Assembly (NCBI RefSeq): GCF_964204865.1
Contig: NC_135254.1
Coordinates: 5,208,001 to 5,272,000, forward strand
DNA: 64,000 nt
Reading direction: 5' to 3'
From: Styela clava
Taxonomy: Eukaryota
A program made the position numbers and the translations under genes. The notes under the pieces were generated by a model. The model was not told where the DNA came from. It saw nothing but the letters and a program-made list of their open reading frames with translations, and searched no databases. Shown piece by piece: positions 1 through 45,210 of this stretch (its first letter is position 1; each line of letters starts with the position of its first letter).

Positions 1-3000
1 TCTTTGCATTCCCTAATAACTGAGGCAACTGTTGAAATGCTTCTGCATCCATGTAAGGATTCCCATCAATAGTCAATGAATCCAACTTGACACCATATTC
101 AATGAATGCTTGATCCATCACACATATTTTCTCTGCGTTCAGGTCACAGTCTTCCAGTGTGAAATTATTAGTCTTTGCATTCCCTAATAATTGAGGCAAC
201 TGTTGAAATGCTTCTGCATCCATGTAAGGATTCCCATCAATAGTCAATGAATCCAACTTGACACCATATTTAATGACTGCTTGATTCATATTACTTATTT
301 TCTCTGCGTTCAAGTCACAGCGTCTCAGTGTGAAATTATTAGTCTTTGCATTCCCTAATAATTGAGGCAACTGTTGAAATGCTTCTGCATCCATGTAAGG
401 ATTCCCATCAATAGTCAATGAATCCAACTTGACACCATATTCAATGAATGCTTGATTCATCTCACTTATTTTCTCTGCGTTCAAGTTACAGTGTCTCAGT
501 GCGAGATTATTAGTCTTTGCATTCCCTAATAACTGAGTCAATTGTTGAAATGCTTCTGCTTCCATGTAAGGATTCCCATCAATAGTGAGTGAATCCAACT
601 TGACACCATTTATAGTGACTGCTTGGTTCATCTTACTTATTTTCTCTGCATTCAGGTCACAGTCATATAGTGTGAGATTATCAGTCTTTGCATTCCCTAA
701 TAATTGAGGCAATTGTTGAAATGCTTCTTTATCCATGTAAGGATTCTTATCAATAGTCAATGAATCCAACTTGACACCATTTATAGTGACTGCTTGGTTC
801 ATCTTACTTATTTTCTCTGCATTCAGGTCACAGTCATATAGTGTGAGATTATCAGTCTTTGCATTCCCTAATAATTGAGGCAATTGTTGAAATGCTTCTT
901 TATCCATGTAAGGAGTCTTATCAATAGTCAATGAATCCAACTTGACACCATATTCAATGAATGCTTGATTCATCTCACTTATTTTCTCTGCGTTCAAGTT
1001 ACAGTATCTCAGTGCGAGATTATTAGTCTTTGCATTCCCTAATAACTGAGGCAATTGTTGAAATGCTTCTGCATCCATGTAAGGATTCCCATCAATAGTG
1101 AGTGAATTCAACTTGACACCATTTATAGTGACTGCTTGATTCATCTTACTTATTTTCTCTGCATTCAGGTCACAGTTATATAGTGTGAGATTATCAGTCT
1201 TTGCATTCCCTAATAATTGAGGCAATTGTTGAAATGCTTCTGCATCCATGTAAGGATTCCCATAAATAGTCAGTGAATTCAGCTTGACACCATATTCAAT
1301 GAATGCTTGATTAATCACACTTATTTTCTCTGAGTTCAGGTCACAGCAACTCAGAGTGAGATATTCAGTCTTTGCATTCCATGATAACTGAGGCAATTGT
1401 TGATATGCTTCTGCATCCATGTTAGATTTCATATTAATACCCAACCAATCCAACCTTACACCATATTCAATGACTGCTTGATTCATCTTACTTATTTTCT
1501 CTACATTCAGATCACAGTCATACAGTGTGAGAATATTAGTATTTGCATTCCCTAATAATTGAGGCAACTGTTGGAATGCATCTGCATCCATGTAAGGATT
1601 CCCATCAATAGTCAATGCATCCAATTTGACACCATATTCAATTACTGCTTGTTTCATCTTACTTATTTTCTCTGCGTTCAGGTCACAACATCTCAGTGTG
1701 AGATTATTAGTCTTTGCATTCCCCAATAATTGAGGCAACTGTTGATATGCTTTTGCATCCATGTTAGGATTTCCATCAATAGTCAATGAATCCAACTTGA
1801 CACCATATTTAATGACTGCTTGATTCATATTACTTATTTTCTCTGCGTTCAAGTCACAGCGTCTCAGTGTGAAATTATTAGTCTTTGCATTCCCTAATAA
1901 TTGAGGCAACTGTTGATATGCTTTTTCATCCATGTTAGGATTCCCATCAATAGTCAATGAATCCAACTTAACACCATATTTAATGACTGCTTGATTCATA
2001 TTACTTATTTTCTCTGCGTTCAAGTCACAGCGTCTCAGTGTGAAATTATTAGTCTTTGCATTCCACAATAACTGAGGCAACTGTTGAAATGCTTCTTTAT
2101 CCATGTAAGGATTCTCATCAATAGTCAATGAATTCAACTTGACACCATATTCAATGAATGCTTGATCCATCCTATTTATTTTCTCTGCGTTCAAGTCACA
2201 GTATCTCAGTGCGAGATTAGTAGTCTTTGCATTCCCTAATAACTGAGGCAACTGTTGAAATGCTTCTGCATCCATGTAAGGATTCCCATCAATAGTCAAT
2301 GAATCCAACTTGGCACCATATTCAATGACTGCTTGATTCATCTCACTTATTTTCTCTGCGTTCAAGTTGCAGTATCTCAGTGCGAGATTATCAGTCTTTG
2401 CATTCCACAATAACTGAGGCAACTGTTGAAATGCTTCTGCATCCATGTAAGGATTCCCATCAATAGTCAATGAATCCAACTTGGCACCATATTCAATGAC
2501 TGCTTGATTCATCTCACTTATTTTCTCTGCGTTCAAGTTGCAGTATCTCAGTGCGAGATTATCAGTCTTTGCATTCCCTAATAACAGAGGCAACTGTTGA
2601 AATGCTTCTGCATCCATGTAAGGATTCCCATCAATAGTCAATGAATCCAACTTGGCACCATATTCAATGACTGCTTGATTCATCTCACTTATTTTCTCTG
2701 CGTTCAAGTTGCAGTATCTCAGTGCGAGATTATTAGTCTTTGCATTCGATAATAATTGAGGCAATTGTTGAAATGCTTCTTCATCCATGTAAGGATTCCT
2801 ATCAATAGTGAGTGAATCCAACTTGACACCATATTCAATGAATGCTTGATCCATCTTACTTATTTTCGCTGCATTCAGGTCACAGTCATATAGTGTGAGA
2901 TGATCAGTCTTTGCATTCCCTAATAATTGAGGCAATTGTTGAAATGCTTCTGCATTCATGTAAGGATTCCCATCAATAGTCAGTGAATTCAACTTGACAC

Positions 3001-3930
3001 CATATTCAATGAATGCTTGATTAATCACACTTATTTTCTCTGAGTTCATGTCACAGCAACTCAGAGTGAGATATTCCGTCTTTGCATTCCATGATAACTG
3101 AGGCAATTGTTGAAATGCTTCTGCATCCATGTTAGATTTCATATAAATATTCAACCAATCCAACTTGACACCATATTCAATGACTGCTTGATTCATCTTA
3201 CTTATTTTCTCTACATTCAGATCACAGTCATACAGTGTGAGATTATTAGTATTTGCATTCCCTAATAAATGAGGCAACTGTTGGAATGCTTCTGCATCCA
3301 TGTAAGGATTCCCATCAATAGTCAATGCATCCAACTTGACACCATATTCAATTACTGCTTGTTTCATCTTACTTATTTTCTCTGCGTTCAGGTCACAACA
3401 TCTCAGTGTGAGATTATTAGTCTTTGCATTCCATAATAATTGAGGCAATTGTTGAAATGCTTCTTCATCCATGTAAGGATTCCCATCAATAGTCAATGCA
3501 TCCAACTTGACACCATAATCAATGAATGCTTGATCCATCTTATATATTTTCTTCGCGGTTAAGCCACATCCTACCAGTGTGAAATTATTAGTCTTTGCAT
3601 TCCACAATAACTGAGGCAACTGTTGAAATGCTTCTGCATCCATGTTGTGATTCCCATCAATAGTCAATGAATCCAACTTGACACCATATTCAATGACTGC
3701 TTGATTCATCTTACTTATTTTCTCTTCATTCAGATCACAGTCATGCAGTGTGAGATCTTCAGTCTTTGCATTCCATAATAATTGAGGCAATTGTTGAAAT
3801 GCTTCTGCATCCATATTCGCATCAATAACCAATGAATGCAACCTAACACCATACTCAATGACTGCTTGATTCATCTTAGTTATTTTCTCTGTGTTCAGGT
3901 GACAGTGTGTGAGTATAAGGCATTCTGGAC
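1..3930 (-). repeat. Coding tandem array of 171-bp units (57 aa = two RI-type LRRs): 22 full units plus 1 divergent, continuing past the left edge
   Basis: The unit-start motif tctttgcatt (or a 1-nt variant) recurs at 1, 172, 343 ... 3421, 3592, 3763, an exact 171-bp period. One unit translates as TNNFTLEDCDLNAEKICVMDQAFIEYGVKLDSLTIDGNPYMDAEAFQQLPQLLGNAK. Confidence 0.97.
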
Positions 3931-6283
3931 CACCATGATAAACCAATTCAATTAGATAATAATAACCAGGAGTTTCAAGTGCTGGACTTGTTATGAAAAG
4001 GTACCCAATCTTAAGGTTTCCCTGCACCACAGCTTCATTCAGGATTCGTAGATTCTCAGGGTCACAATTGATAAGATGCAGGGATTTTACCTGAATATTC
4101 TTTACGAAACCAAGAACATGTTGTAGGGAAGAATGATTTTCAGGATGCAATTCCAAATCGCTTAATTTCAATGTATGGAGTGAAGAACTATGCTCAACAA
4201 CAGACATTACTGCATGCTGTTCTACTGGTTGGACTATTCTCAAATGCATCTCTTCTATTTGTGAGCAAACTTTTTTAATAACATCAGAACCACATTCGTG
4301 TAATGACATCACGACCAGTATATCTGAAATCACTTTTCCGTCCAATAATTTATTTAAGTAACCCATCAGGTATTCAGACTTGCTATGCAAGTTATTAGGA
4401 AGATATTTTGCTACTTTTTCTGAAGTTGATTTGTTGAGAATAATTCCAAAAATATGTTTTATAACGACTTCCATTCCTGGTTTCTTATAATTATCCTCCA
4501 TAAACTTTTTAAATTCATCCAAATCAAGAGTGCAGGCATAAAGAGCAGCAAGTATCTCTTGTATACTCTCGTGAAGGAATCGGATTCTCATATCATCGTT
4601 ATCCGCAACATACTCAACAAATCGTGTGTCAGCATCCATCTCAACAAGACCACGCATGTCATTCATGTCCAACTTGAGTGATCTAATATAGCTTGCAGTG
4701 AAAACAAATAAATTTTCTTTCATTCCATGATAAGCCAACTCCATGAGTTTCAATAAAGGACTTTCGACAGTTCCTCCGTGACGAGATCCTGAAAAAAGTT
4801 TCAGAACAGAAACCATCAGATTCGTTAATGTGCCAATATCACTTTTCTCTGAATTTTTCAACACTCGAACCATGTAGAAAAAAAACATTGGGTTTGAAAC
4901 AAGACCAGGTGCCTCAAGTCTCAAATCAGAATACATTTTTCTTCCTTCAGGACTAAATAACTTTCCAGCAAGAAGTTCCAGTGTTTCATCCTCCCATCCC
5001 CCTAGGGTGAGATTTAAAGATGCTTTAAGATCTGGAGGCAACTTCCAATACATATTCCAACGAGTTGTTGACAAAATCTTCATACCGGAATAGATGTGGC
5101 CGGATAGAATATTGGCGAGAATAGTATTGGTTTCTGCTCGAGTGTCCATTCCAATTCTCTGATAACCTTTTTCAAATGGCTTCCTAATTTGGTCCAAGCC
5201 ATCAACTACAAGTAAGATATATTTTGAATTTTGCTCGAACCATTCTTGTCCAACTTTATGAAGGTGTTTTGGAAGTTTTGAGCCGAGTTGTTGAACGAAT
5301 AGAAGATCGAAAGCAGTTGATTGAGAATCACCTTGTAAATTAGAAACATCCACAAAATAGACCATCTTAATTTCGTCCGAGAAGTTCAATTTATTTTCCA
5401 GTGCTGACAATGCATATCTCATTGAAAATGTTGTTTTTCCAGAACCTGTGTCTCCCAACAACATCACACGTTTGACTGAGTTAACAGAATAAATCTTTGT
5501 AATATCCAGTGATTGCAAACTAGTCTGTTTGTTGGATTCCGATTCCTTGAACTCAGTCACCTTGGGAAGTATGAAATCATCCAATTTTGTTTTTTCTTTG
5601 GCAGTCTTTAATCTAGATTCCAACATATTCTTTGTATAACCTCTCACTACATCAATAAACTCTTTTGCCTCTGAACCTTCAGTAGGTTTTTTGAATGATT
5701 TCAGCATTCGGTCTCCGCCTTCCTGAATGATCTGCTCTTCCTCAACTTGATTTGCATCTTGAACATAAAGACGAACCACTTCTCTTATTCTTTCAATCAC
5801 TGCTACATCATTAGTATTCGGACTCTTAGAATGTCTCCATTTCCACAGTAATTTAAGGTTGCGTTCCTCCACTGAGGATCTATTATCTTCTGTGATAGTG
5901 TCAACTTCATGTTCAGTAAGAGACAATCCCTGCCCTGATCTCGCAAACTGCTTGAATTCCTCGGATGTAAATCGCCTAATAACATCTTGAAAAACATCTT
6001 CAAGTCTTCCAAGAGGTACGGCTTGTTGTTCAGCTGTATAAAATTGCGTTACAAGATTCTCCATTCTTTGTGCAGTTGCATTTGGTCTGTTTCTTTCAAC
6101 CCAAAGCCAAAACAATTCCTTTTTCTGTTCTTCAACAGAGAACCTGTGGTTTTCAATGACCGTAGTGACATCTTGCACACTGAGTGAAAGTCCTTTCCCA
6201 GATTGTGCAAAGGTTGTGAAATCTGAAGTTGAGGCAAATTGTCTCACACATCCTCTAATTACATCTTCTAGTCGGTCACTCAT
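1..6283 (-). CDS. NLR innate immune receptor (death-fold x2, NACHT, HD/WH, long LRR array); single coding exon, 3' end outside window, >2090 aa
   Basis: Hand translation from ATG at 6283 (MSDRLEDVIRG) is open to the repeat array, and the ORF track reports no stop in this frame. Walker A LLGDTGSGKTT ~5429-5461, Walker B ILLVVDGLDQ ~5190-5220, sensor-1 ILSTTR ~5060-5078, winged-helix FLHESIQEILAAL ~4541-4580, HD2 SLHEC ~4292-4307. A pyrimidine tract plus TAG acceptor lies at 6317-6340. Confidence 0.93.
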   Translation of the reverse strand, partial: MSDRLEDVIRGCVRQFASTSDFTTFAQSGKGLSLSVQDVTTVIENHRFSVEEQKKELFWLWVERNRPNATAQRMENLVTQFYTAEQQAVPLGRLEDVFQDVIRRFTSEEFKQFARSGQGLSLTEHEVDTITEDNRSSVEERNLKLLWKWRHSKSPNTNDVAVIERIREVVRLYVQDANQVEEEQIIQEGGDRMLKSFKKPTEGSEAKEFIDVVRGYTKNMLESRLKTAKEKTKLDDFILPKVTEFKESESNKQTSLQSLDITKIYSVNSVKRVMLLGDTGSGKTTFSMRYALSALENKLNFSDEIKMVYFVDVSNLQGDSQSTAFDLLFVQQLGSKLPKHLHKVGQEWFEQNSKYILLVVDGLDQIRKPFEKGYQRIGMDTRAETNTILANILSGHIYSGMKILSTTRWNMYWKLPPDLKASLNLTLGGWEDETLELLAGKLFSPEGRKMYSDLRLEAPGLVSNPMFFFYMVRVLKNSEKSDIGTLTNLMVSVLKLFSGSRHGGTVESPLLKLMELAYHGMKENLFVFTASYIRSLKLDMNDMRGLVEMDADTRFVEYVADNDDMRIRFLHESIQEILAALYACTLDLDEFKKFMEDNYKKPGMEVVIKHIFGIILNKSTSEKVAKYLPNNLHSKSEYLMGYLNKLLDGKVISDILVVMSLHECGSDVIKKVCSQIEEMHLRIVQPVEQHAVMSVVEHSSSLHTLKLSDLELHPENHSSLQHVLGFVKNIQVKSLHLINCDPENLRILNEAVVQGNLKIGYLFITSPALETPGYYYLIELVYHGGPECLILTHCHLNTEKITKMNQAVIEYGVRLHSLVIDANMDAEAFQQLPQLLWNAKTEDLTLHDCDLNEEKISKMNQAVIEYGVKLDSLTIDGNHNMDAEAFQQLPQLLWNAKTNNFTLVGCGLTAKKIYKMDQAFIDYGVKLDALTIDGNPYMDEEAFQQLPQLLWNAKTNNLTLRCCDLNAEKISKMKQAVIEYGVKLDALTIDGNPYMDAEAFQQLPHLLGNANTNNLTLYDCDLNVEKISKMNQAVIEYGVKLDWLNIYMKSNMDAEAFQQLPQLSWNAKTEYLTLSCCDMNSEKISVINQAFIEYGVKLNSLTIDGNPYMNAEAFQQLPQLLGNAKTDHLTLYDCDLNAAKISKMDQAFIEYGVKLDSLTIDRNPYMDEEAFQQLPQLLSNAKTNNLALRYCNLNAEKISEMNQAVIEYGAKLDSLTIDGNPYMDAEAFQQLPLLLGNAKTDNLALRYCNLNAEKISEMNQAVIEYGAKLDSLTIDGNPYMDAEAFQQLPQLLWNAKTDNLALRYCNLNAEKISEMNQAVIEYGAKLDSLTIDGNPYMDAEAFQQLPQLLGNAKTTNLALRYCDLNAEKINRMDQAFIEYGVKLNSLTIDENPYMDKEAFQQLPQLLWNAKTNNFTLRRCDLNAEKISNMNQAVIKYGVKLDSLTIDGNPNMDEKAYQQLPQLLGNAKTNNFTLRRCDLNAEKISNMNQAVIKYGVKLDSLTIDGNPNMDAKAYQQLPQLLGNAKTNNLTLRCCDLNAEKISKMKQAVIEYGVKLDALTIDGNPYMDADAFQQLPQLLGNANTNILTLYDCDLNVEKISKMNQAVIEYGVRLDWLGINMKSNMDAEAYQQLPQLSWNAKTEYLTLSCCDLNSEKISVINQAFIEYGVKLNSLTIYGNPYMDAEAFQQLPQLLGNAKTDNLTLYNCDLNAEKISKMNQAVTINGVKLNSLTIDGNPYMDAEAFQQLPQLLGNAKTNNLALRYCNLNAEKISEMNQAFIEYGVKLDSLTIDKTPYMDKEAFQQLPQLLGNAKTDNLTLYDCDLNAEKISKMNQAVTINGVKLDSLTIDKNPYMDKEAFQQLPQLLGNAKTDNLTLYDCDLNAEKISKMNQAVTINGVKLDSLTIDGNPYMEAEAFQQLTQLLGNAKTNNLALRHCNLNAEKISEMNQAFIEYGVKLDSLTIDGNPYMDAEAFQQLPQLLGNAKTNNFTLRRCDLNAEKISNMNQAVIKYGVKLDSLTIDGNPYMDAEAFQQLPQLLGNAKTNNFTLEDCDLNAEKICVMDQAFIEYGVKLDSLTIDGNPYMDAEAFQQLPQLLGNAK

Positions 6284-6648
6284 ATCTCCGATACTTGGAG
6301 ATACTACTATACTACACTATATAATTGGGGGAAGAAAAAAAACATGCAAAAGTGGAATTAAGGACTTTGCACAACCAATAGTTCATTTCAGGAATAAATA
6401 ATCTAAAGTGCCTGCAGTAAACCAATTTTGCGTATAGGTTTTGAGAAATTCGCATTTTTGCAATAGTCTGATTCTGACAGCCAAATATAAAAATGGACTA
6501 CCTAAAATCAAAACTAAAACAAGTACAGTTTTGACACCCAGACTAAAAGTTTGATCAGATGGTTGTCTCATTTGAAGAGTGGTACCTCTTTCAAGCGACC
6601 CCAAATTCATGTAAAATATATTTTGTGGAATCCCACAATCCAAGATTA

Positions 6649-8623: not shown

Positions 8624-8729
8624 GATATAAAAAACTGAACAGCCAATAATAAGAACTTGCAATCTCAAGTAATTTAAATATAAAAAACTGAACAGCCAAT
8701 AATAAGAACTTGCAATCTCAAGTAATTTA
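8624..8729. repeat. Two-copy ~53-bp tandem repeat
   Basis: atataaaaaactgaacagccaataataagaacttgcaatctcaagtaattta occurs twice. Confidence 0.85.
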
Positions 8730-9099: not shown

Positions 9100-10192
9100 T
9101 ATTCAGTCACATTTCATTGAACATTGTTCAGAGTATTAAATATACGGAGCACCAATTCTGTCCAGTCACACTTCATTGATCAATGTTCAGAGAGTACTAT
9201 CATTCAGCACTAAATAAAATATACCAAGCACCAATTATTCTGCCCAGTCACACTTCATTGATCACTGTTCAGAGTAATGTCATCAGCCAGTATTAAATAA
9301 AATATACCAAGCACCAATTATTCTACCCAGTCACACTTCATTGATCAGAGTAATGTCATCAGCCAGTATTAAATAAAATTTACCAAGCACCAATTATTCT
9401 GGCCAGACACACTTCATTGATCAATGTTCAGAGAGTACTATCATTCAGCACTAAATAAAATATACCAAGCACCAATTATTCTGCCCAGTCACACTTCATT
9501 GATCAATGTTCTGGGTAATGTCATCAGCCAGTATTAAATAAAATATACCAAGCACCAATTATTCTGTCCAGTCACACTTCATTGATCAATGTTCAGAGAG
9601 TACTATCATTCAGCACTAAATAAAATATACCAAGCACCAATTATTCTGCCCAGTCACACTTCATTGATCACTGTTCAGAGTAATGTCATCAGCCGGTATT
9701 AAATAAAATATACCAAGCACCAATTATTCTACCCAGTCACACTTCATTGATCAGAGTAATGTCATCAGCCAGTATTAAATAAAATTTACCAAGCACCAAT
9801 TATTCTGGCCAGACACACTTCATTGATCAATGTTCAGAGAGTACTATCATTCAGCACTAAATAAAATATACCAAGCACCAATTATTCTGCCCAGTCACAC
9901 TTCATTGATCAATGTTCTGGGTAATGTCATCAGCCAGTATTAAATAAAATATACCAAGCACCAAATATTCTGTCCAGTCACACTTCATTGATCAGAGTAA
10001 TGTCATCAGCCAGTATTAAATAAAATTTACCAAGCACCAATTATTCTGGCCAGTCACACTTCATTGATCACTGTTCAGAGTAATGTCATCAGCCAGTATT
10101 AAATAAAATATACCAAGCACCAATTATTCTGGCCAGTCACACTTCATTGATCACTGTTCAGAGAACTGTCAGTCAGCAAGTATTAAATAAAA
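9100..10192. repeat. Minisatellite, ~13 units of 76-83 bp with higher-order structure
   Basis: taaataaaat anchors at 9211, 9294, 9370, 9452, 9535, 9617, 9700, 9776, 9858, 9941, 10017, 10100, 10183. Confidence 0.95.
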
Positions 10193-13073
10193 TGGGATAG
10201 AATTTACATATTCATCCCAGAAGAGAGGAAAGCATAAGATGATTTATTCATATGGCAAACCACAGTAGCGACTTATACCCGTGACCTGTAAGGCCTGGTA
10301 CGAGTCAAACCATCCCGGAAGGCCTATAAATTTTTAATCTATGAAGCAAAATGTGTACTATTTATTTTACCTATGGTCAGGGATGGCCAATATCGAATAG
10401 TTCACTATTTCGAATACATTCGAAATTATTTTTTTCGAATATCAAATTTCGAATACTTCGAAAATAAAATCCACTAATTGAGTTGAACTAAGTTCCAACC
10501 TAGCCAAATTACCAGGCATTTCATATTTGCAGATTATTGCAGTATATATTTTATATACCATTAGTCATGTTAACAGAATTAAATCAATACGACAATAGTG
10601 GAATCGATGATGGATTTGAATATTTGCGCAACACAAAATCATCCTAGTAAAACGCCATTACTTTTAAATACCAACCATTATCCAAATTATTTGTCAAAAA
10701 GCGGGATGAGGTATGAGGTATTTTTCCGACTTGTGACAATTTTTTCGTGAGTACAAAAATACGAATCAAAAATTAATTATATTCGGGAACTTTACCACAC
10801 ATTTTAAGTCTGCAGATCGCCGTTGTATGTTTGAGTAATAATACTTTCATTATTTCATAAATATGAAAATAGGAATCAAAAACTATTTATAATCGGGTAG
10901 TTTACCCCAGGGCTGGGGAGTCGGAGCTGGAGCTTGGAGCCATGGAGCCGTGACATTTTGATGGAGCCGGAGTCGGAGTTGAGCTGGCCATGATAGATGG
11001 AGCTGGAGCCAGAGCCGGAGCTGCCAGAATTTTCAGCGGCTCCAGCTCCTGACGATAGAATTATTTTTTTTTTTTACTTTTCTGATTTTTTAATAATTTC
11101 TAGGGTTGAGAAATAATAATTTTAATTCTATAATTTCTGGCGTCTCCAAACACTTAACAGAACTAAATAGTTGTATAATTAATCAAGTTACTATTGTTCT
11201 AAAGTAAATAGTGTTGGATTATATCACGGATCTTGGTATTTTTAAACGGCGATAACGATTTGGCAAGATCGCAAAAATATGAATCAAAATTAATTATAAT
11301 CGGGCAGTTTTCCACACATTTTACGTCCGTATCTTGTCATTTATGTTAGAGATGCTTTTATTATTTCGTAAGTCGAAGCTACATTGAGTTACTTTGAACA
11401 GAATAGAAACAATGAGGCAAGTGCTGGTATCGGTAATGGGTTACATTTTTAGCACAATAGAAAATTATTTTCTGACAAGTCGTTTTTTTTTAAATATTAT
11501 AAAAAAAATTATTCGCCAAAGCGCAGGAAAAAGTATAAATTATATTTTCCTAATCTTCCCAATGAAGCAACTTATTTTTCCGACTTGCGGAAGTTTATTG
11601 GGGTATCGTAACAAAACGTATGAAAACAACTTATTTAATATATGACACGTGTGAACATAATAATATTCAAATTTTGATTTCACTTCCATTCGCTCGCGGG
11701 ATTGGCAAGAATAAACGCTTTGCGGGAAGGTTTTCTAAAAGTGAGTGCGTTTAGTTATTAATAATAACTTTACATAATTAATAATTTCCCGACGTAACTG
11801 GAAATAAATACGAAAATGGCGACAATATCCACCACGCAACCGTAAAAGAATGCTGTAACGCGCACTAAAAAATAAATATATATACCAAACAATCTAACAA
11901 TTCTATTTTGTCGTCTTAAAAACACATGACAAAGTGCATACAATCGTTTGAAGATTTTGCTCGGAAACGAAACAAACAAACAGCTTGCGAAAAGTGACTA
12001 TTACTTTAAAATTTGAAAAAGTATCGGAATACTTTGATATAGCAATATGGACTGATAAAGTTATTTTGTCGTGAAAAATAGCGGTAATGCATTCTGATAT
12101 ACTGTTTTCTGTGAAACTTAAGTTTCATGCTTGAGAACTACAAGCAGTCGCGGTCGTTAACGGGGTTGCACACTTAATTCATTTTTTGCTTTACGATCAA
12201 ATTACCATATATATATATGTATACTAATATTTATTGATGTCGATTAGTGGCCAATGCAACCGGCTATTTTGCGATTACCTGATTACAACTCCTCACTGCT
12301 TTTCTTTTTCTAATAAATGGTATTTACTGGCAAGTGTTAAAAATACTTTTGTAGATAAAAAAAAAACAGACTACTTAAATTTCTCAGAAATATTATTTGC
12401 GAATAATTTGATTTCGGCGATCTAAAAAATCTCATTGCCGCTAACGACTACTAGTAAAAAACAAAACTATATTGCAAAGAGGGGCGTTTTGACTATTTGG
12501 GAATCCCTAAATATTATGTAATATTTCCGAATTTAGATCTGAAGTGTCGTATATAAGGTTAGGTCATCGGCTTTCTCAGCTTGGTTGTATATGACGTAAA
12601 ATGGATTCCGAAAAAAATGCGATTAGTTTTCTTGTCTTCGTCTCATGAATTGCACCGCGATATAATGATGCGACGCGGTAGGTCACATGGAGTGTGTTCA
12701 GTGGATTTAGTCGAAATCGGGATTGCGCAATAATTGATTGTAGTACAGGTGTGGCTTGCGCAATACATCGGCAATTGTGGACAAGAAAAAAGCGATCGGC
12801 CGATCGCTAATTTACCTTTGTGACGTAACTAACAGTAAAGACCACGTAGACATGTCTGGGCATGTTCAAGCAATGCTGAAACATGACATGCTGGCTTGCA
12901 TGCCTAAGTGTCGGAATGGCCAGTTGATGTATATTGTATACGATACAATTTCTCGCTTGTAGAAAATGCTCACCGAATCTTAATGCCATTCATGACAATA
13001 TAATATTTCATTTTAAATAGTATTTAATATTAAATTAGAGAAAATTAATTTGTAAGAATGCAACCCTTGTACC

Positions 13074-14975
13074 ATGGCTTGCAAAAGTAAAAAGTCCGCA
13101 GTGTTCAAAAATTTCAAAGAGAGTGGAGATAAAAATGCACTAATCTGCCAAGTATTAAAGAAAGATGGGGCCGTTTGCAATCTCAGGTTCATCAATAAAA
13201 CTTCAAATTTGAAGCGGCATTTGGAAAGACATCATTTTGATGCCTTCGAACCTGTCAAAAAAGAAGACAGTGAAGACACAAAGAGAGACAGCGATATAAG
13301 TAGACAAACCTCTGTCTCAAGCTACTTCACAAGTCAAAAAGTGACCATTTCCATGACTAAAAGAAATTCCAGAGACATATCATACAGCTAGTGGTGAATA
13401 ATGCAGCTGCACTTCAACTGTTCTCTTCGAAAGCATTCCTCGGATTAAATGGAGAAATGGCCAACAAATTGGGAGTATCACTGGAGAGACATGATATAAA
13501 TTATAAGAGATATGGTGGTGAAGGAAGCCGAGTGTCAGAAAAGAGTGTTAAAGGATATATTACATGGGAAATTTTGTTTTTTGAAAATGGACGCTTGTAC
13601 TATACAGAGAACTAATTATTTCGCTATAAATGTTCAATTTGTGGATTATAAAAATGAAATAGCCATCCGTACATTATCAGTACGGGATACACAAGCTCAA
13701 CACACAAGTGAATTTATTCAAAAATTTGTTGAGGAAGTTCTGAGAGAGTTTGAAATTAGAAAAGAACATATATTAGCGATTGTGACAGATAATGCCTCTA
13801 ACATGACAAAAACAATAGAGAAACTTAATGCAGATATGATCGGGGACGAGGTTGAACGTGATGATGAGTTGAATGAAGGTGAATCAGATGAAGCTTTAGT
13901 TAGTGCTGTAAACAGCATAACAGCTGTTCATACAATTGAGCACATGCGGTGTGCAGTACATACCCTCCAGCTTGCTATTCGTGATGGTTTAAAAGAAAAG
14001 CATGTACACACTTTCCTAAGTAAGCTACGTCAAACCTCAGTCATGGCCAGGACGCCTAAAATAGATGCTATATTGAAGCGTAGAACAGGAAAAGGTGCAA
14101 TAATAGATCAAGCCACTAGGTGGGGTAGCACCTACTTAATGATTCAGCGGCTCTTAGAAATAAAAAACAGTTTAATTGACATGGCCAATCCAGACATAAC
14201 CTTGACTGATTTGCAATGGCGACAGACACATCAATTAGAAGAATTACTTCGGGAGCCCTATTTAGTCACCAAAAGGTTACAGGCACAAGATTTGACACCA
14301 GGGTCTTTTTATAAAGAGTGGAAAAACCTCATTTATAAACTTTCACAATCCAGTAGTATCATTGCAGATGCTATAAAAGCATCTATGCTGCGCAGAGAAA
14401 AATGTCTCCTCGATAACCCTGTATTATTAGCGGCTATTTATGTTGATCCTATGTACAGGGTTACCCTAAGTGAAGAACAGCTCAATAGAGGAAAAGCAGC
14501 GCTATGTGATATAGCTGTTCGAATGCACCGTGGATCACGAGCTACACAACTCGAAGACCAATCACTCTGTGCTAGTGGGCCTTTAAGGAACTTCTCTGAT
14601 TCTGGTTCCGAATGCGAAATAGATTTTGAAAAACACCTTGACATTGAAGCCAAACGTCGTCGAACAGAGAAGGAAAGTAGAAACTCAAATTCAGATCTAT
14701 CACCGCTTTCCAAATTCAAAAGAGACTTCTTTTATGCTTTAAATGATGTAGAAAAAATAGATCGCTCATATAAGTTTGATATTCTAAAAGCCATCCCAGA
14801 ATATCCAGAAATAGTTCAAAATGTGGCATATATGGTGACAGCATTGCCTCCAACCCAAGTTAGTGTGGAAGGATTGTTTTCGGCCCTGCGCATAATTCGT
14901 TCGGACCTGCGAGCCTCAATGAAAGAAGATTTAGTGGAAGCGATACTGTTCTTATTAAGAACAAATTCATTTTAA
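13074..14975 (+). pseudogene. hAT transposase (zf-BED, DDE core, C-terminal dimerisation domain) broken by two frameshifts
   Basis: BED finger CQV...C...SNLKRHLERHH; motifs MDACT, IVTDNASNM, RCAVHTLQL, TRWGS, PPTQVSVEGLFS. The coding frame shifts near 13360 (KFQRHIIQLVVNN) and returns near 13500. Confidence 0.88.
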
Positions 14976-39310: not shown

Positions 39311-40882
39311 CTAAGCTCTATTCTGTAATGTTTTCTGGAAATTTTTCTTCTTTCGTCTTTTCTGTGGACTCTGTGGAGCGTCCGTGAACAACGAATCATC
39401 TGCAATTTTATCCCCACGACGTAGTTTGCCTTTCAGATTCGGCTCTGCGTATGAAACGCCCGAAGCAGCTCTACGTCCTGTCCTCCGAGGAGCGGAATTT
39501 TCTTTATTTATATCGTTGTAATTGTTCAGTTTGATTCTTTTATTTTCATCAAGTATGAAACTATCACTCGAACAGCTTAGGAAATCATAAGCAGTTTTGT
39601 TCATCAAATCTTTCTTAGTTCCAAACTTGCTAGTTCCTTTGCTCTGCTTAGCTTTGGGTTTAATGGGATTAAGGTTACTAAAAGGTTCGTTGACGTTTTG
39701 ATCTTCCGAAGTTGTGTGTTCAGGATTGCGTGGTGTTCTAACACTGTCGCTATTTTCTCCATCAGAGTTATCAGAGAGATTTAAACAGTTTGGGCTGGTA
39801 GTTTCTGAAATACTTATTTCTGCATTTTTTACAGATGCTACATTTTCACTTCTAACATTCCCATTCATGACATCACAATCATTGTTAGCATCGTCTATTT
39901 CATCACAATCATCATTCAAGCTTTCATTAACCAATGAATGAGAACTACCAGAAATGTTTAAATTCAAATTCATACAACTTGGACGACCATGGTTAACACT
40001 GAAGTTGAAGTCAGAGTCTGCAGAAATATTTAAATCTAATGCATGCAAATCTTCGCAATCATTTAAAATTTCTTGACCATCAGATTGTGAGAACTCTTCT
40101 TCCTCTGCCAAAAGAGACATTTGGTTATTATCAGTCTTTTCAGATGACATAAATTTAGGGCTGTGTTGGTCTTCATAGTCATTCCTATTTACTGATAGCA
40201 CGCCATCACCATTTTCTAAAGCCTTATCTTCCACTATGGGTTGTTTTCTCATAACTCTCCTAGGCCTCTGTGTTATACTGCTACTCAAAAATCTCTCCTT
40301 CACCTTCGAAGTTGAAATTTCATCCTTTTGAGAGTCACGATTTTCCTTGTAGATAGAGTTTGTGGCTCCGCTTCGTTCGGTGATGTTATTTAAAGTAAGA
40401 TTGGCATCGTTTGAAAGATTCGGGATTTGAAAATTGAGAGAAAAATCTGAATTGTTTCCGTTTTGTACTGAGTCAATCGCACTCATGACATTGTCGAATT
40501 GTTCTCGTAAAAGGAATGCGTATTTCAAGATATTCTTTTTAGCTTCAACTTCCTTTTTGAGCTTAATATTTTTCTCCGTTACAGATTTTAGTTTCTGTTG
40601 GTTAGCAGCGTGTTCCACCATCATTGAAATCTGTTTGTCTCTGTACATGTGATTATCATTTTCCAATTGAGAGTTATTTCGACGAATTTTCGCAAGTTTT
40701 GTGACACAGATTTTATTTTTATGCTCCAATGCACACAATTGTTGTGAAACAAAGGACTTATTTTGACCCGGATCTTGATGTGCTCTTCTGTTGCCTTTTA
40801 CGTTTCGAAGATGGTCAATGCTACGATCAAAGGAAGTATTTTCCAATCTTGGCCAGTCTACTCTACTTGTATTTGCTTCCAT
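39311..40882 (-). CDS. SGO1: Shugoshin-family centromeric cohesion protector, single exon
   Basis: 523-aa ORF with an N-terminal coiled coil and the C-terminal basic SGO motif RRAASGVSYAEPNLKGKLRRGD. Confidence 0.85.
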   Translation of the reverse strand: MEANTSRVDWPRLENTSFDRSIDHLRNVKGNRRAHQDPGQNKSFVSQQLCALEHKNKICVTKLAKIRRNNSQLENDNHMYRDKQISMMVEHAANQQKLKSVTEKNIKLKKEVEAKKNILKYAFLLREQFDNVMSAIDSVQNGNNSDFSLNFQIPNLSNDANLTLNNITERSGATNSIYKENRDSQKDEISTSKVKERFLSSSITQRPRRVMRKQPIVEDKALENGDGVLSVNRNDYEDQHSPKFMSSEKTDNNQMSLLAEEEEFSQSDGQEILNDCEDLHALDLNISADSDFNFSVNHGRPSCMNLNLNISGSSHSLVNESLNDDCDEIDDANNDCDVMNGNVRSENVASVKNAEISISETTSPNCLNLSDNSDGENSDSVRTPRNPEHTTSEDQNVNEPFSNLNPIKPKAKQSKGTSKFGTKKDLMNKTAYDFLSCSSDSFILDENKRIKLNNYNDINKENSAPRRTGRRAASGVSYAEPNLKGKLRRGDKIADDSLFTDAPQSPQKRRKKKNFQKTLQNRA

Positions 40883-41726
40883 TTTAGGTCTTTGCTACAA
40901 ATCCAAAACTTATCGGGGTGTACATTCACTAGTGATGTAATAATTAGATCTGCGACAAATAATAAAACAAATATTGAATGAGAAATAACATTTGAAAAAT
41001 TCAATAGAGTGCTAAATTTGACTCGATAAGTATGAACCACTCTGTAAATTACCATGCTATGTGAACATTGTATTAAAATAAAACAAAAATGCTAGACCAG
41101 TGGTTCTCAAACTTGCGCCCCCTTTTCAGAAGATCACATGTAACAAATATTTTTAATTAGCTTCGCGGCCCATCAAAAATTGTGGGGCTCCCGAAGTATG
41201 CGAACCAAGATGGCGGACATCGGAATGTAATATGTGTACCATTCATTTTTATTTTTAATTAGCTTCACGCCCCCACAAAAAAATTGTTTATCCCCCTCTA
41301 GTGGGGCACACCCCACCGCCTGAGCACCACTGCATTAGACAATCACACAAAATGATTCGAAAGCAAAGTCATTAATAAAGGCGTTGATGAAACAAAAAGT
41401 GAATCTGGTAAATCTAGACTCGTAGTGAGATCCAAAAATACTTGAACTTCGACCTTAATAAAATATTTGAAGAACCCAGATGCAAGCAAAATTTGATAGA
41501 AACTACTGTTCCACTACTTAAGAGGCGTATCTGAAACAATATGTCAGCATTTCTTTTTTGCAATTTCATATACCGGTACCTTAAATATTGTGTTATTTCA
41601 TATAAAGGGCAGCAATTCTCATCTTAAATTGTTCAATAACAGCATTTCTAATATGCAAATTCTCTCGACTTTATTCATTATTCCAAATATAATTTTCAAG
41701 CATTCCTGCGTTTGGTTGGAAAAATC

Positions 41727-41883
41727 GGGTCTCATGTAGTTTCGTACCTAACATACTTCTAGTAGGCGTAGCAGAACGTAAATTTTGGATGGCGTAGTCA
41801 GATGGGAGTTAGGAATGACACATCAAAAAATTGTTATGCTAGGCCCATTAGAAGTACGTTAAGTACGAAACTACACGAGACCC
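41727..41883. mobile_element. Foldback MITE just downstream of the ZC3HC1 stop
   Basis: ~50-bp inverted arms gggtctcatgtagtttcgtacctaac / gttaagtacgaaactacacgagaccc; flanks gaaaaatc / aaaaaatc. Confidence 0.8.
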
Positions 41884-41949
41884 AAAAAATCCTATGCTAG
41901 AAATATTGTGTTACTTCTTGTATGATCAATATGACTGAAGAATGAAAAT

Positions 41950-43338
41950 CTATTTATATCGAGACCATTCTTTTAACAGTTTTCTGACATGAATTACCGG
42001 ACTTCCGGAAGCAGCAATTTTGGCGTCGAAGTTCGTTTGATCTCTGGCTGGTGAATTTCCATCCAAAATAGAGTTTGAACTTTCGTTTGTAACATTTTGC
42101 ACTTTTTCACTTGTGTTCTTTTTATCGAGGATTGTGTTCTTGACTACCAACCACCCTGGCTTTGCTTCCTTCATGGTGGGATTGATAATAAAATGATATA
42201 AATCGTCATTTTGATCTTTGTCAGTTACGGATGCTCCCTTTTTAGCAGCGTCACTTTCAAACTCAACTTTTGATATCGGGTTTAGAGTAGTAATCCAAAA
42301 CGACCAAGGTGAATGTTGTTCCAAAGGATGGAAGTTCTGCTTTGTGATTGTTTTTCCTCGAGGAGAACCTAAAGCGCTTTCGGTGGCCGTTTTCAATTTT
42401 TTGATCGGTGACTGAGAATCTTCACCATTTGTTGTGCTTAATCGTCTTTTTAATGTTGATTGACCATTAGAAGTAAGCAGTGCAGCTGCTTGAGAATGGG
42501 ACTCATCGCTGTCAGAAGATAGAGAGTTACTTCCAAGTTGGAAAAAGCTTCGTAGAGACATTACCCTTCCTGAATTTTCACATATGATAGTTGGTGACTT
42601 TGAATCTAAACTGTGACTTGTATCCCAACCACACATCGCAAGTATTGCCGCTGTTATTTCAACAGTAAATTTAGATTGAGATTCGACAGTATCACTCGCG
42701 TTACTTTCTGAATCCTGCTGTGTTTGACACAGAACTCTTAGGTCAGCTTTTGACAAGTTCAGAGCAGTTGTAATGTTTGGATCTAAATTCGGGAGTTTTG
42801 TTCCAAGCTTTATGAGATTTTTTTCACGTTCTTGATACTGTGATAAGATCTCACTTGGTGATGCACTACTGTGAAAAAACGGAGAAACAAATGAATTGGA
42901 ACATGGGTAACTCGGCCATGAACATATTTTCATGTGAGATGTTATAACTCTCTGTCGGTAATCAAAGCACTGCTGACGATAATTATCAGCATCAGGCCAT
43001 GGAAGACGGACACACATAACAGCGGCACATGAACAACATTTAACAGTGTCTACACCGATACATTGCCAACCATATTGAGCAAATAGGGGAGGACTCAATG
43101 CAAGAGGTTTTGCCATCCATTTTGATACAGTAAATGTGGCAACTCTCTCAGTGAAGGATTCCAATCCTCTCTGCTTTTGTGATACAGTATCTGCTTCTCC
43201 CTTTGCTTTCTTAATGAACGAGAAAAGCGTGTTCTTCACTTGAGAGACGAAAGATTTTGAAGATCGCTGGGCAACAGGTGGCGATGTAGCTCTATTACCT
43301 AATAATGAGGTCGATACGCCCTCATCAGACTCTGACAT
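41950..43338 (-). CDS. ZC3HC1: ZC3HC1/NIPA nuclear basket protein (zf-C3HC plus Rsm1-like module), single exon
   Basis: 462 aa; RVATF...WMAKPLALSP...AQYGW...KCCSC...HMKICSWP; second module LAMCGW ... FHPLEQHSPW. Confidence 0.9.
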   Translation of the reverse strand: MSESDEGVSTSLLGNRATSPPVAQRSSKSFVSQVKNTLFSFIKKAKGEADTVSQKQRGLESFTERVATFTVSKWMAKPLALSPPLFAQYGWQCIGVDTVKCCSCAAVMCVRLPWPDADNYRQQCFDYRQRVITSHMKICSWPSYPCSNSFVSPFFHSSASPSEILSQYQEREKNLIKLGTKLPNLDPNITTALNLSKADLRVLCQTQQDSESNASDTVESQSKFTVEITAAILAMCGWDTSHSLDSKSPTIICENSGRVMSLRSFFQLGSNSLSSDSDESHSQAAALLTSNGQSTLKRRLSTTNGEDSQSPIKKLKTATESALGSPRGKTITKQNFHPLEQHSPWSFWITTLNPISKVEFESDAAKKGASVTDKDQNDDLYHFIINPTMKEAKPGWLVVKNTILDKKNTSEKVQNVTNESSNSILDGNSPARDQTNFDAKIAASGSPVIHVRKLLKEWSRYK

Positions 43339-43512
43339 ATTTGAACCTATGAGATATGCGGAAAATGATCAATTTAACATGAGAATACTAGCAATAAAAG
43401 TAATAAATGACAAATAACATATATAAATTTCTTGATTAAATTACAAAATCAAATATGCGTTGGCTTACACATCGGAAAAATCATCACAATTCAACAAAGC
43501 ATTTCAAAATAA

Positions 43513-43911
43513 TCAGTTTGCGTTATAAAATGTTTTTGATAAGTCTGCAACTGCCTGCTTCACACCACCAAGATATTCTTGTAACTCCTCTCCAAGATCC
43601 AGAATTAGTCCTATGTTGCATTCACTGTTGGTTACAAAACTGACGGTCAAAGGCTGTCTAGTGAACTTTATAATATTGTAGTTACTATAAGAGCATATAA
43701 TGTATTTATTTCTTCCGTAGCCAAGTTTACTGGCTTGATCAGTTGCCAAGGTAAAAGTCCCCAAAAATGCAGGCCGCAGGGTGTAATCAGGTGCCTTTTC
43801 GTTTGCAATTTTCAGAACAGGTACTCCATCTCTATCTGAAACAACTATTGCGTACAGACCGTCAACGTTGCTAAGTTGCCGATAGAGAAATTTCTTCAAA
43901 TCTTCCGACAT
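43513..43911 (-). CDS. LAMTOR3: Ragulator subunit LAMTOR3 (MP1), single exon
   Basis: MSEDLKKFLY...GLYAIVVSDRDGVPVLK...LRPAFLGTFTLATDQASKLG; true ATG at 43911, preceded by a pyrimidine tract and CAG. Confidence 0.96.
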   Translation of the reverse strand: MSEDLKKFLYRQLSNVDGLYAIVVSDRDGVPVLKIANEKAPDYTLRPAFLGTFTLATDQASKLGYGRNKYIICSYSNYNIIKFTRQPLTVSFVTNSECNIGLILDLGEELQEYLGGVKQAVADLSKTFYNAN

Positions 43912-44791
43912 TATTCTGATAAGCGAAGTGAACTTAAAGATAAAAATGAAATACTGTTGCCAGATTTTTGTAGATATTTGTGCCACCTCATTGGATGTTC
44001 AATTTTAAGTTGAATTGATATAACTTTTCTAGGGTGGAGGTCTTTAAAGTTTTAAATTGGAAGATTTTGTGTGTTCCAAATTTTACAATGCTAAAAAATA
44101 CGATTAGTTGTTTAATTTTATGGAATACAATATGAGAACTATAGCAATATGGCAACAGTAAAGGCCGCGCGTGATATTTTACTCTCTTGTTCTAACATTT
44201 ATTATTTATCATATGGGAAAATATCTTTTATATTTTCTTTCAAATAACTATATAATTTTAATTTTCGTGTTTTTCCAATGTTTTAATTTTTTTCAACATA
44301 TTATAATTAAAAGGGTAATTTTAATCATTAGTCTCCCTGCGTCGTGTTAAATTCAAACCGGTAAAATATAAAACGAATTTCACGAGTAGTTTCTAACTTG
44401 GGTGAATTGCCTTGTCACCATTCTGCCATTCCAGTCCCTGGTCCCAACTAAACTCTTACATAGATAATGGGATAGCTTTATTGTGTTGAAGATAGTTTTG
44501 TTTGAAGTTTAGGAAGATATTCCACCCCGTTCCGATAATTTAAGGGTCGTTTCCGTACCGGTAATTCAAAGTCAGATTTGTTTTATTTGTCACTTAAATC
44601 GAAGAGTTTTAACATACGGTAATTTTAGGGCAGTTGTTATACGGTACCGATATCTCTACATGTAGACTATGTATTTTTTATAGTTTTTTTTCTGTATTTA
44701 TTGTGAGTTGGCATCCCTGTAGTATTCTGGTATTATTCATACCCCAGCCAGACAGGCCTGTCAGTCTGTAATATGGCTTATATCACTGTAT

Positions 44792-45210
44792 CAGGGGTGG
44801 GCAACCTTTTATCGCTCCTGGGCCAAGATTAAGGGTTGCACATCATTGGCGGACCGCACATACGGTATCTCTAGAAAGTTGAAAACCGAACGGATGATAG
44901 TTTTTATAATGAAAATCAAGCAGTGATACATCTCTCGAATATAATGTAGATTTATTTCCTCATTGCATTGCATCTCAAAAAGTTCCATTTGAATATTTTT
45001 GGCGCTATTGAACCCTTTGCACTTAGCATCATTAAACTAGTCATTGTAAATTTTATACTTAAAATTTAAGATTATAATATAATTTAGTCTACACGTGTCT
45101 CACAATAAATTCGGTTACGTAAAGAATATAATCGTCAAAACAGCTGTTTTGATACTATAATTCAGTGAAGTGTCGTGGGCTGGATCGGGGCCGTAGGTTG
45201 CCGACCCCTG
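44792..45210. mobile_element. hAT MITE in the LAMTOR3-SNRPA1 intergenic region
   Basis: Ends caggggtgggcaacct / aggttgccgacccctg. Confidence 0.8.

What the first reader, a model, noticed from the sequence alone, without database searches (positions are those of the whole stretch)
1..3930. NLR with a giant intron-free LRR array that varies mainly on the predicted ligand-binding face: candidate recombination-diversified immune receptor
Seen: at least 23 in-frame 171-bp units (about 46 LRRs, and the array leaves the window), with no frameshift and a nearly constant scaffold. The beta-strand segment differs between units: NNFTLEDC, NNFTLRRC, NNLALRHC, DNLTLYDC, NNLALRYC, DNLTLYNC, EYLTLSCC, NNLTLRCC, NNFTLVGC, EDLTLHDC. 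Known: the x positions of xxLxLxx line the concave binding surface; ribonuclease inhibitor nearly closes a ring with about 15-16 such LRRs; high internal repeat identity with hypervariable surface positions is how fungal het-e-type NLRs generate new specificities. Inference: this animal NLR may be a repeat-shuffling receptor that forms a multi-turn superhelix.
Basis: partly seen in the sequence, partly recalled or inferred. Interest (0 to 1): 0.85.

Follow-up and report, generated by a model that had tools for sequence, protein, structure and literature searches.

The report
Sea-squirt NLR with 28-unit LRR array
One intron-free immune-receptor-type (NLR) gene of the sea squirt Styela clava has grown its leucine-rich-repeat domain to about 60 repeats, while its roughly 20 sister genes carry 2 to 8; the gene looks intact and its repeats have been duplicated and reshuffled, but adaptive diversification of this one array is suggested rather than shown.

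Summary
The minus strand carries one open frame of 2,501 codons, giving a 2,490-aa protein. It runs from window 6283 to 1.19 kb before the window start. The domain order is Death-Death-NACHT-LRR.

The LRR part is 28 tandem 171-bp units of 57 aa, each two ribonuclease-inhibitor-type LRRs. There is no indel and no stop. About 23 units lie in the window.

The genome is Styela clava. All 18 sister genes in which units could be counted have only 1-4 units, so the giant array is private to this gene. It grew by block duplication, and its units are mosaics of each other (recombination test p=0.0002).

- **Where replacements fall:** they are enriched at the exposed beta-strand positions (permutation p=0.0004). 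Most replacements still lie elsewhere, including a helix that is invariant in the sister genes.
- **dN/dS in the array:** about 2.9 at the ten strand positions (p=0.013, tree-based). A tree-free count gives about 1.5, which is not significant. The rest of the unit gives 0.6 and the whole unit 0.87.
- **dN/dS in the short sister genes:** diversifying selection at the same positions is strong (p=2e-7).

Expression and array-length polymorphism could not be settled. Precedents exist: zebrafish NLRs with more than 20 LRR exons, human NLRC5, and a second giant Styela NLR.

The scan had already noted this stretch (s1-816060) and the sister family elsewhere on the chromosome (s1-829470).

The parts
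1..3763 (-). LRR array, units 22 down to 1. These are 22 complete 171-bp (57-aa) double-LRR units at 2-3763. The array continues for 5 more units, a C-terminal cap and the stop codon in the 1.19 kb before the window start.
   Evidence: TRF period 171, 22.9 copies. Open frame and unit register. AF2 beta-alpha LRR solenoid, pLDDT 91.7. Foldseek top hits are ribonuclease inhibitor and NLRP3/9/14.
3764..3934 (-). First, degenerate unit of the array (unit 0). It is 2 aa shorter and corresponds to the first unit of the sister genes.
   Evidence: Register listing. The sister genes' first units form their own clade.
3935..4216 (-). Pre-array LRR-like region with an N-terminal cap, conserved in the sister genes.
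   Evidence: Direct reading of the translation and of the sister genes' C-terminal parts. No domain hit of its own.
4217..4954 (-). Helical and winged-helix region between NACHT and LRR.
   Evidence: Weak NOD2_WH hit at aa 521-555, E=0.0013, below Pfam's cut-off. Position is as in other NLRs (inference).
4955..5470 (-). NACHT NTPase domain with Walker A GDTGSGKT and Walker B LLVVDGLDQ.
   Evidence: Pfam PF05729, E=1.5e-15, 57.9 bits against a cut-off of 26.7. The motifs are shared with all sister genes.
5750..6019 (-). Second Death-like module.
   Evidence: Pfam Death PF00531, E=1.2e-8, aa 122-167.
6020..6283 (-). First Death-like module, including the start codon (6281-6283; MSDRLEDV...).
   Evidence: 40% identical to the second module, E=7e-19. 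RefSeq models of the sister genes start at the same MSDRLEDV.
6284..6345 (-). Polypyrimidine tract plus AG about 33 nt before the ATG. This is a likely 3' splice or trans-splice acceptor, so the whole coding region is one exon.
   Evidence: Direct reading. The function is inferred.

Best explanation
This is a genuine, intact, single-exon gene of Styela clava for a cytosolic NLR-type receptor. Its domain order is two Death-fold modules, a NACHT NTPase, and an LRR solenoid.

The family it belongs to has about 20 intron-free copies, mostly at 0.9-1.5 Mb of the same chromosome. Those copies normally carry 1-4 double-LRR units. Their exposed beta-strand residues are under strong diversifying selection, which is the signature of a recognition surface.

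In this one dispersed copy the internal unit was amplified in the germline to 28 units, about 60 LRRs. The mechanism was unequal crossing-over or replication slippage between 171-bp units, which the absence of introns allows. Block duplications followed (a block of about 10 units, then triplets and pairs), along with gene conversion that made mosaic units.

Selection has kept the frame open and part of the scaffold constant. Exposed strand positions and one helix accumulate replacements.

Shown: the gene anatomy, the private expansion, the recombination traces, the enrichment of replacements on the strand, the RI-type fold, and selection in the family.

Inferred:
- The long solenoid winds into a helix of roughly three turns.
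- It offers many slightly different binding patches.
- It signals through its Death domains.
- Unit number varies between haplotypes.
For: - **Anatomy:** open frame of 2,501 codons with no N. NACHT and Death domains. Same start as the annotated sister genes. The conserved C-terminal cap is in frame after the array.
- **Species:** the closest proteins are Styela clava models on a contig whose length equals G000:C5.
- **Private expansion:** the 18 fetched sister genes in which units could be counted have 1-4 units. The unit DNA occurs elsewhere only in stretches of 645 b or less.
- **Origin of the units:** the gene's units 1-26 form seven types, none nested among sister-gene units. Unit 27 groups with the sister genes' last units.
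- **Block duplication:** u3-5 against u13-15 differ by 3, 7 and 5 nt. u7-9 differ by 2-4 nt.
- **Recombination:** 27% of informative site pairs fail the four-gamete test. Neighbouring sites are more compatible than permuted ones, p=0.0002.
- **Frame maintenance:** 4.6% of random point changes would create a stop. At least 127 substitutions predict 6.1 stops, none is seen (P=0.002), and there is no indel.
- **Constraint and selection in the array:** scaffold omega 0.60 (p=0.007), helix B 0.33 (p=0.0003), ten strand positions 2.9 (p=0.013).
- **Selection in the family:** strand positions reach the upper bound of omega, with p=2e-7 against omega=1 in seven two-unit sister genes. The rest gives 0.47.
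- **Fold:** pLDDT 91.7, pTM 0.81, strands at unit positions 3-7 and 32-36. Ribonuclease inhibitor and NLRP LRRs are the best matches.
Against: - Whole-unit omega is 0.87, not different from 1, so much of the array may be under weak constraint.
- The selection signal at strand positions is marginal. It rests on a tree although the units recombine. The tree-free count gives about 1.5 (Fisher p=0.08).
- Helix A, invariant in the sister genes, varies here. That fits relaxed constraint as well as a new function.
- No protein model of this gene turned up in two database searches that did return the sister genes' models.
- Transcription is not shown. Only short contigs from runs guessed to be RNA match the unique part at 97-99%.
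- No read spans the array. Hi-C reads of another sample gave few near-identical reads. Frequent GANTC sites in the units make that test unreliable.
Confidence: 0.7

Rival explanations
1. Neutral runaway expansion. A dispersed, dispensable copy of the family has had its 171-bp unit amplified by slippage and unequal exchange without any benefit. It is drifting, and the open frame persists only because the expansion is young.
For: - Whole-unit omega is 0.87, not different from 1.
- Helix positions that are invariant in the sister genes vary here, and variability is more diffuse than in the sister genes.
- No annotated protein was found.
- Hi-C reads of another sample show few near-identical reads.
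Against: - There is no stop and no indel despite at least 127 substitutions (P about 0.002 for stops alone).
- Unit divergence (mean 13%, up to 25%) is as large as the gene's divergence from its sister genes (14-16%), so the array is not young.
- Helix B omega is 0.33 (p=0.0003) and scaffold omega 0.60 (p=0.007).
- The C-terminal cap is intact and in frame.
Confidence: 0.2
2. Assembly artefact. The array length or order was produced by mis-assembly of a shorter repeat.
For: No single read or contig spanning the array could be examined. Logan contigs are fragmentary there.
Against: - The units differ by 2-43 of 171 nt in a non-periodic order. That gives long reads unique anchors and is not what collapse or over-expansion produces.
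- There are no gaps in 27 kb.
- The array occurs once in the genome.
- Unit-specific pieces recur at 98-100% identity in runs of three other studies.
- The frame is perfect over 4.8 kb.
Confidence: 0.05
3. Somatic diversification. Unit number or order is rearranged in immune cells, in the manner of lamprey VLR assembly.
For: None beyond the repetitive, recombination-prone layout.
Against: - The germline gene is already complete and open.
- There are no flanking cassette banks. The unit DNA occurs elsewhere only inside the sister genes.
- The few odd joints seen in contigs carry inserted letters (tables 5 and 5c). I read them as a different unit variant, perhaps from a sister gene, rather than a rearrangement; this was not tested.
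Confidence: 0.02

Closest known systems
Zebrafish NLR-B30.2 family, groups 2b and 4 (Howe et al. 2016, PMC4852459)
   Same: An animal NACHT-LRR family in which one LRR type has been duplicated 'more than 20 times' within a gene. The number of LRRs varies between paralogues, the last LRR is fixed, and gene conversion shapes the family.
   Different: - In zebrafish each LRR unit is its own exon. Here 28 units sit in one exon.
- The zebrafish LRRs are 'not particularly variable' and recognition is assigned to the B30.2 domain.
- Here there is no B30.2 domain, and the family's strand positions are under strong diversifying selection.
Fungal NLRs with highly conserved repeats (HET-E/nwd family; Paoletti 2007 PMC1805685; Dyrka 2014 PMC4986451)
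   Same: NACHT protein with a tandem, in-exon repeat array. Stretches exceed 85% identity over 100 aa or more. Replacements concentrate at predicted binding positions, and there are traces of repeat shuffling.
   Different: - The fungal repeats are WD, ANK or TPR. No LRR was found in fungal NLRs.
- Fungal repeats are exchanged between paralogues. That is not seen here.
- Overall identity here is lower (76.5%).
- Repeat-number polymorphism and positive selection are documented in fungi but unproven here.
Human NLRC5 (PMC3848420)
   Same: An NLR with an exceptionally long RI-type LRR domain, 33-43 LRRs of alternating types. It was modelled as a continuous helix of two full circles.
   Different: - NLRC5's LRRs are old, divergent and encoded exon by exon.
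- It is a conserved transcriptional regulator.
- Here there are about 60 LRRs, recent and similar to each other, in one exon, in a fast-evolving family with Death domains.
Styela clava LOC120326569 (P0001, 2,923 aa, uncharacterized)
   Same: Same genome, Death-NACHT followed by about 30 units of 57/54 aa that resemble each other.
   Different: - Its Death-NACHT part is only 32% identical.
- Its units are separate exons 0.3-2 kb apart on another chromosome.
- It is therefore an independent expansion with the usual gene layout.
Ribonuclease inhibitor
   Same: Alternating 28/29-residue LRRs, a beta strand plus a long helix per repeat, and the best Foldseek match (E=3e-11).
   Different: RI has 15-16 LRRs and no NACHT. 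Alignment rmsd is about 9 Å, so the overall curvature or pitch of the model differs.

Membership tests
Metazoan NLR (NACHT-LRR) | NACHT NTPase domain with Walker A and B motifs | tested here: met
   PF05729, E=1.5e-15, 57.9 bits, above the cut-off. GDTGSGKT and LLVVDGLDQ are present, as in all sister genes.
Metazoan NLR (NACHT-LRR) | C-terminal leucine-rich repeats | tested here: met
   AF2 solenoid of alternating strand and helix, pLDDT 91.7. Foldseek probability 1.00 to ribonuclease inhibitor and NLRP3/9/14 LRRs. Pfam LRR_8 reaches 75 bits only as a sum of weak hits.
Metazoan NLR (NACHT-LRR) | N-terminal death-fold effector domain | tested here: met
   Pfam Death, E=1.2e-8. A second copy is 40% identical.
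Metazoan NLR (NACHT-LRR) | Winged-helix and helical domains after NACHT | tested here: inconclusive
   NOD2_WH at 19.2 bits, below the cut-off of 23.1. No PDB sequence match for the Death-NACHT part.
RI-like LRR subfamily | Alternating 28- and 29-residue repeats with a helix on the convex side | tested here: met
   57-aa unit with strands at positions 3-7 and 32-36 and helices at 13-26 and 43-55.
Repeat-shuffling NLRs with high internal conservation (fungal HET-E type) | Repeats over 85% identical over at least 100 aa (criterion of PMC4986451) | tested here: met
   Units 7-9 (171 aa) are 95-98% identical and units 11-12 are 98% identical. Only 11% of all unit pairs reach 85%, and the mean is 76.5%.
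Repeat-shuffling NLRs with high internal conservation (fungal HET-E type) | Positive selection at positions of the binding surface | tested here: inconclusive
   Omega is 2.9 at ten strand positions (p=0.013) and 2.4 at five (p=0.17). The tree-free estimate is about 1.5, Fisher p=0.08. The signal is strong only in the short sister genes.
Repeat-shuffling NLRs with high internal conservation (fungal HET-E type) | Repeat exchange between family members | tested here: not met
   Units 1-26 of this gene never nest among sister-gene units.
Repeat-shuffling NLRs with high internal conservation (fungal HET-E type) | Repeat-number polymorphism between alleles | tested here: inconclusive
   Only short contigs and low-depth Hi-C reads were available. 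No record spans the array.
VLR-like somatically assembled LRR receptor | Incomplete germline gene plus flanking donor cassettes | tested here: not met
   The germline frame is complete. No cassette bank exists; unit DNA elsewhere lies only inside sister genes.

The most novel reading that the evidence does not exclude
This is the first animal LRR-type NLR that behaves like the fungal HET-E class. On this reading, an in-exon array changes unit number and order between haplotypes through unequal recombination. Diversifying selection acts on the strand residues of each unit. The population would then hold a large set of receptor alleles, used against pathogens or in self/non-self discrimination. 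The solenoid of about 60 LRRs would wind into a helix of about three turns that displays many binding patches at once.
Probability: 0.2. Interest if true: 0.75.

Novelty: new variant of a known kind. Interest (0 to 1): 0.5.

Why it matters
Repeat-number expansion inside a single exon is how fungal NLRs generate new specificities, but fungal NLRs lack LRRs. In the animal cases I compared (zebrafish NLR-B30.2, human NLRC5 and the second Styela gene) long LRR domains are built exon by exon.

This locus shows that an animal LRR-NLR can take the in-exon route. It reaches about 60 LRRs, more than the 33-43 estimated for NLRC5. It belongs to a family whose binding-face residues are under clear diversifying selection.

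It is a compact test case of one 7.5-kb exon. It could show whether array length and order vary between individuals, and what a multi-turn RI-type solenoid does in a receptor. If the array turns out to be drifting, it is instead a clean example of runaway repeat growth in a dispensable immune-gene copy.

Tried and rejected
- **Pfam on the array alone.** It gave many high 'whole-protein' scores with no single matching stretch (DrsE_2, YL1_C, MA3 and others). I rejected these as sums over repeats.
- **Shifted-register alignment for folding.** I wanted an alignment of unit-shifted copies of the array as input for structure prediction. MAFFT slid the rows back onto their true overlaps. The model was still confident.
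- **Model geometry.** Model coordinates are not exposed, so pitch and turns per repeat could not be measured.
- **Sequence searches of the Death-NACHT part.** PDB gave nothing and NCBIfam gave only noise.
- **Reads.** The single read-laying run returned only short Logan contigs plus roughly 5x Hi-C reads (1,890 million letters read of a 377-Mb genome).
  - The run kinds are unknown or guessed.
  - The Hi-C reads are mostly 90-95% alike and 44% chimeric.
  - The units hold a GANTC site about every 70 b.
  - I therefore draw no conclusion on expression, copy number or polymorphism.
- **Whole gene as one locus.** The exact-sequence look-up of the full 2,490-aa protein was therefore not done.
- **Pooled pairwise dN/dS.** The value of 2.4 at five strand positions is not independent across pairs. 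I replaced it with minimal-change counts and codon-model likelihood tests.
Full report
**1. What is there**

Tandem Repeats Finder reports one array at window 1-3906 with period 171, 22.9 copies and 88% matches. The coding strand is the minus strand. A single frame is open from window 6316 to the window start.

The window is G000:C5:5208001-5272000. With the 20 kb in front of it added, the frame ends 1,187 b before the window start. That makes 2,501 codons, with no N anywhere in the stretch. The other five frames of the array carry 74-179 stops.

The first Met is codon 12 (window 6281-6283). RefSeq models of the sister genes begin with the same MSDRLEDV, so the protein has 2,490 residues. A polypyrimidine tract and an AG lie 33 nt before the ATG. 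I read this as a splice or trans-splice acceptor, so the coding region is one exon.

**2. Domains**

- Pfam finds NACHT (E=1.5e-15) and Death (E=1.2e-8).
- A second Death-like module in front of the first is 40% identical to it.
- Walker A and Walker B match those of all sister genes.
- The array reads as 27 exact 57-aa units, preceded by a degenerate first unit and followed by a conserved C-terminal cap.
- Each unit is two LRRs of 28 and 29 residues.
- AlphaFold2 on 12 units gives pLDDT 91.7 and pTM 0.81. Strands lie at unit positions 3-7 and 32-36 and helices at 13-26 and 43-55.
- The best structural matches are ribonuclease inhibitor and the LRR domains of NLRP3, NLRP9 and NLRP14.

With the flanking LRR-like repeats the protein has about 60 LRRs.

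**3. Organism and family**

The closest database proteins are 77-79% identical. They are Styela clava models on a contig of 24,897,793 b, which is exactly the length of G000:C5. The genome is therefore Styela clava.

The NACHT-to-LRR part has 24 further matching places in the genome. Most lie at 0.9-1.5 Mb of the same chromosome, and others lie on C9, C14, C16, C18 and C19.

I fetched 20 of them. Their open frames are about 1,000-1,100 aa. All 18 in which units could be counted contain 1-4 units.

The array DNA matches elsewhere only over 645 b or less. The giant array is therefore private to this gene. The scan had noted that family independently (s1-829470), and I confirm it.

**4. How the array arose**

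- **Unit tree.** Units 1-26 form seven well-supported types that never nest among sister-gene units. Unit 27 groups with the sister genes' last units. One or more internal units were therefore amplified inside this gene.
- **Difference matrix.** Units 3-5 and 13-15 differ by only 3, 7 and 5 nt, a block at a lag of ten units. Units 7-9 form a triplet differing by 2-4 nt, and there are near-identical pairs.
- **Recombination.** 27% of informative site pairs fail the four-gamete test. Neighbouring sites are more compatible than sites in permuted order, p=0.0002. The units are mosaics, as unequal exchange and gene conversion produce.
- **Age.** Mean unit divergence is 13% and reaches 25%. That equals the gene's own divergence from its sister genes, 14-16%. 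Growth therefore began early and has continued until recently.

**5. Is the gene maintained?**

4.6% of random point changes in the units would create a stop. At least 127 substitutions are needed to explain the units, which predicts 6.1 stops, and none is present (P=0.002). No unit has an indel. The C-terminal cap is in frame.

Codon models give omega 0.60 for the 47 non-strand codons (p=0.007 against 1) and 0.33 for helix B (p=0.0003). This argues for selection on the frame and on part of the scaffold.

**6. Where the variation lies**

Entropy is highest at unit positions 8, 18, 7, 2, 20, 25, 37, 43 and 54.

The table gives a tree-free minimal count of changes.

| Codon class | Replacements | Silent changes |
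|---|---|---|
| Five strand x positions of the first LRR | 22 | 4 |
| Five strand x positions of the second LRR | 13 | 2 |
| The other 47 codons | 60 | 26 |

- Replacement density at the five positions is 4.4 per codon against 1.4 elsewhere (permutation p=0.0004).
- The replacement-to-silent ratio does not differ significantly from the rest (Fisher p=0.31 for five positions, p=0.08 for ten).

The next table gives the codon-model estimates on a fixed tree.

| Partition of the array | omega | p against omega=1 |
|---|---|---|
| Five strand positions | 2.4 | 0.17 |
| Ten strand positions | 2.9 | 0.013 |
| Helix A | 2.7 | 0.07 |
| Whole unit | 0.87 | 0.41 |

The tree-based tests ignore the recombination shown above, which can inflate them.

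The short sister genes behave differently. Their variability is sharply confined to the strand positions of both LRRs, and the scaffold is almost invariant. In seven two-unit sister genes, omega at the strand positions runs to the upper bound, with p=2e-7 against 1. The rest gives 0.47.

The family's concave face is therefore a diversifying surface. The giant array shows a weaker and more diffuse version of that pattern.

**7. Reads**

One call was allowed.

- Runs of three other studies hold unit-specific pieces at 98-100% identity.
- A run guessed to be RNA holds pieces of the unique linker at 97-99% identity. That is far above the 84-86% of the nearest sister genes. It is suggestive of transcription but does not show it.
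- No record spans the array.
- Hi-C reads of another sample were few and mostly 90-95% alike. The units carry a GANTC site about every 70 b, and 44% of what was laid ran on into unlike sequence. I draw no conclusion from them.
- Two protein searches that returned the sister genes' models returned no model of this gene.

**8. Comparison with what is known**

[quoted passage not shown] Their LRRs are not variable (PMC4852459).
- **Human NLRC5.** It has 33-43 RI-type LRRs and was modelled as a helix of two full circles (PMC3848420). At that rate about 60 LRRs would make close to three turns. This is an inference, because I had no coordinates.
- **Fungi.** Fungal NLRs show high internal repeat conservation, repeat-number polymorphism and positive selection at binding positions. 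Their repeats are WD, ANK or TPR and never LRR. Such repeats are rare in animals (PMC4986451, PMC1805685).
- **A second Styela gene.** LOC120326569 is 2,923 aa long and its Death-NACHT part is only 32% identical. It also has about 30 similar 57/54-aa units, as separate exons. Giant arrays have therefore arisen at least twice in this species.

**9. Verdict**

- Supported: an intact NLR with a recombination-built, intron-free giant LRR array, and replacements enriched on the strand.
- Not established: 'mainly on the binding face' and dN/dS above 1.
- Untested: polymorphism, expression and geometry.

I file it as a new variant of a known kind and give it moderate interest.

Noticed in passing
G000:C2:0.02-5.9 Mb and elsewhere (outside the window): The genome holds at least 97 NACHT matches above Pfam's cut-off, out of 194 candidates. 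They include dozens of near-identical 467-aa open frames strung along contig C2. As far as I recall this is far more than reported for Ciona; I did not check that figure here.
   Followed up: no
G000:C4:18.45-18.47 Mb (L033, L036, L037): A second giant NLR, LOC120326569 (2,923 aa), has about 30 similar 57/54-aa LRR units encoded as separate exons 0.3-2 kb apart. It is an independent expansion in a distant subfamily.
   Followed up: partly
window 39311-46768: Four ordinary genes appear as single long open frames: a shugoshin C-terminus protein (39311-40882, -), zf-C3HC/NIPA-like (41950-43338, -), LAMTOR3/MAPKK1_Int (43513-43986, -) and a U2A'-like LRR_9 protein (45998-46768, +). The giant NLR therefore sits among housekeeping genes, 3.7 Mb from its family cluster.
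   Followed up: partly
window 8625-8729 and 9155-10193: Non-coding tandem arrays lie 2.3-3.9 kb upstream of the NLR start. One is 53 bp x 2 (100% identical). The other is a nested 83/241/406-bp array of about 1 kb.
   Followed up: no
window 13512-14975 (+): A 487-aa open frame has a weak DUF659 hit, below the cut-off. I took this as possibly transposase-related, which was not tested.
   Followed up: no
L021 = G000:C19:15682618-15692617: One relative of the family has a 1,304-aa open frame whose C-terminal part is not the usual LRR cap. By eye it resembles a ZU5/UPA-type tail; I did not test this. Earlier notes of the scan report NACHT-LRR-ZU5-UPA architectures in this genome (s1-819821).
   Followed up: no
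L014 and L030 (C5:896467-906466; C9:21619343-21629342): Two family members have interrupted frames: 622 plus 478 aa in L014, and 844 aa ending before the LRRs in L030. They are probably pseudogenes.
   Followed up: no
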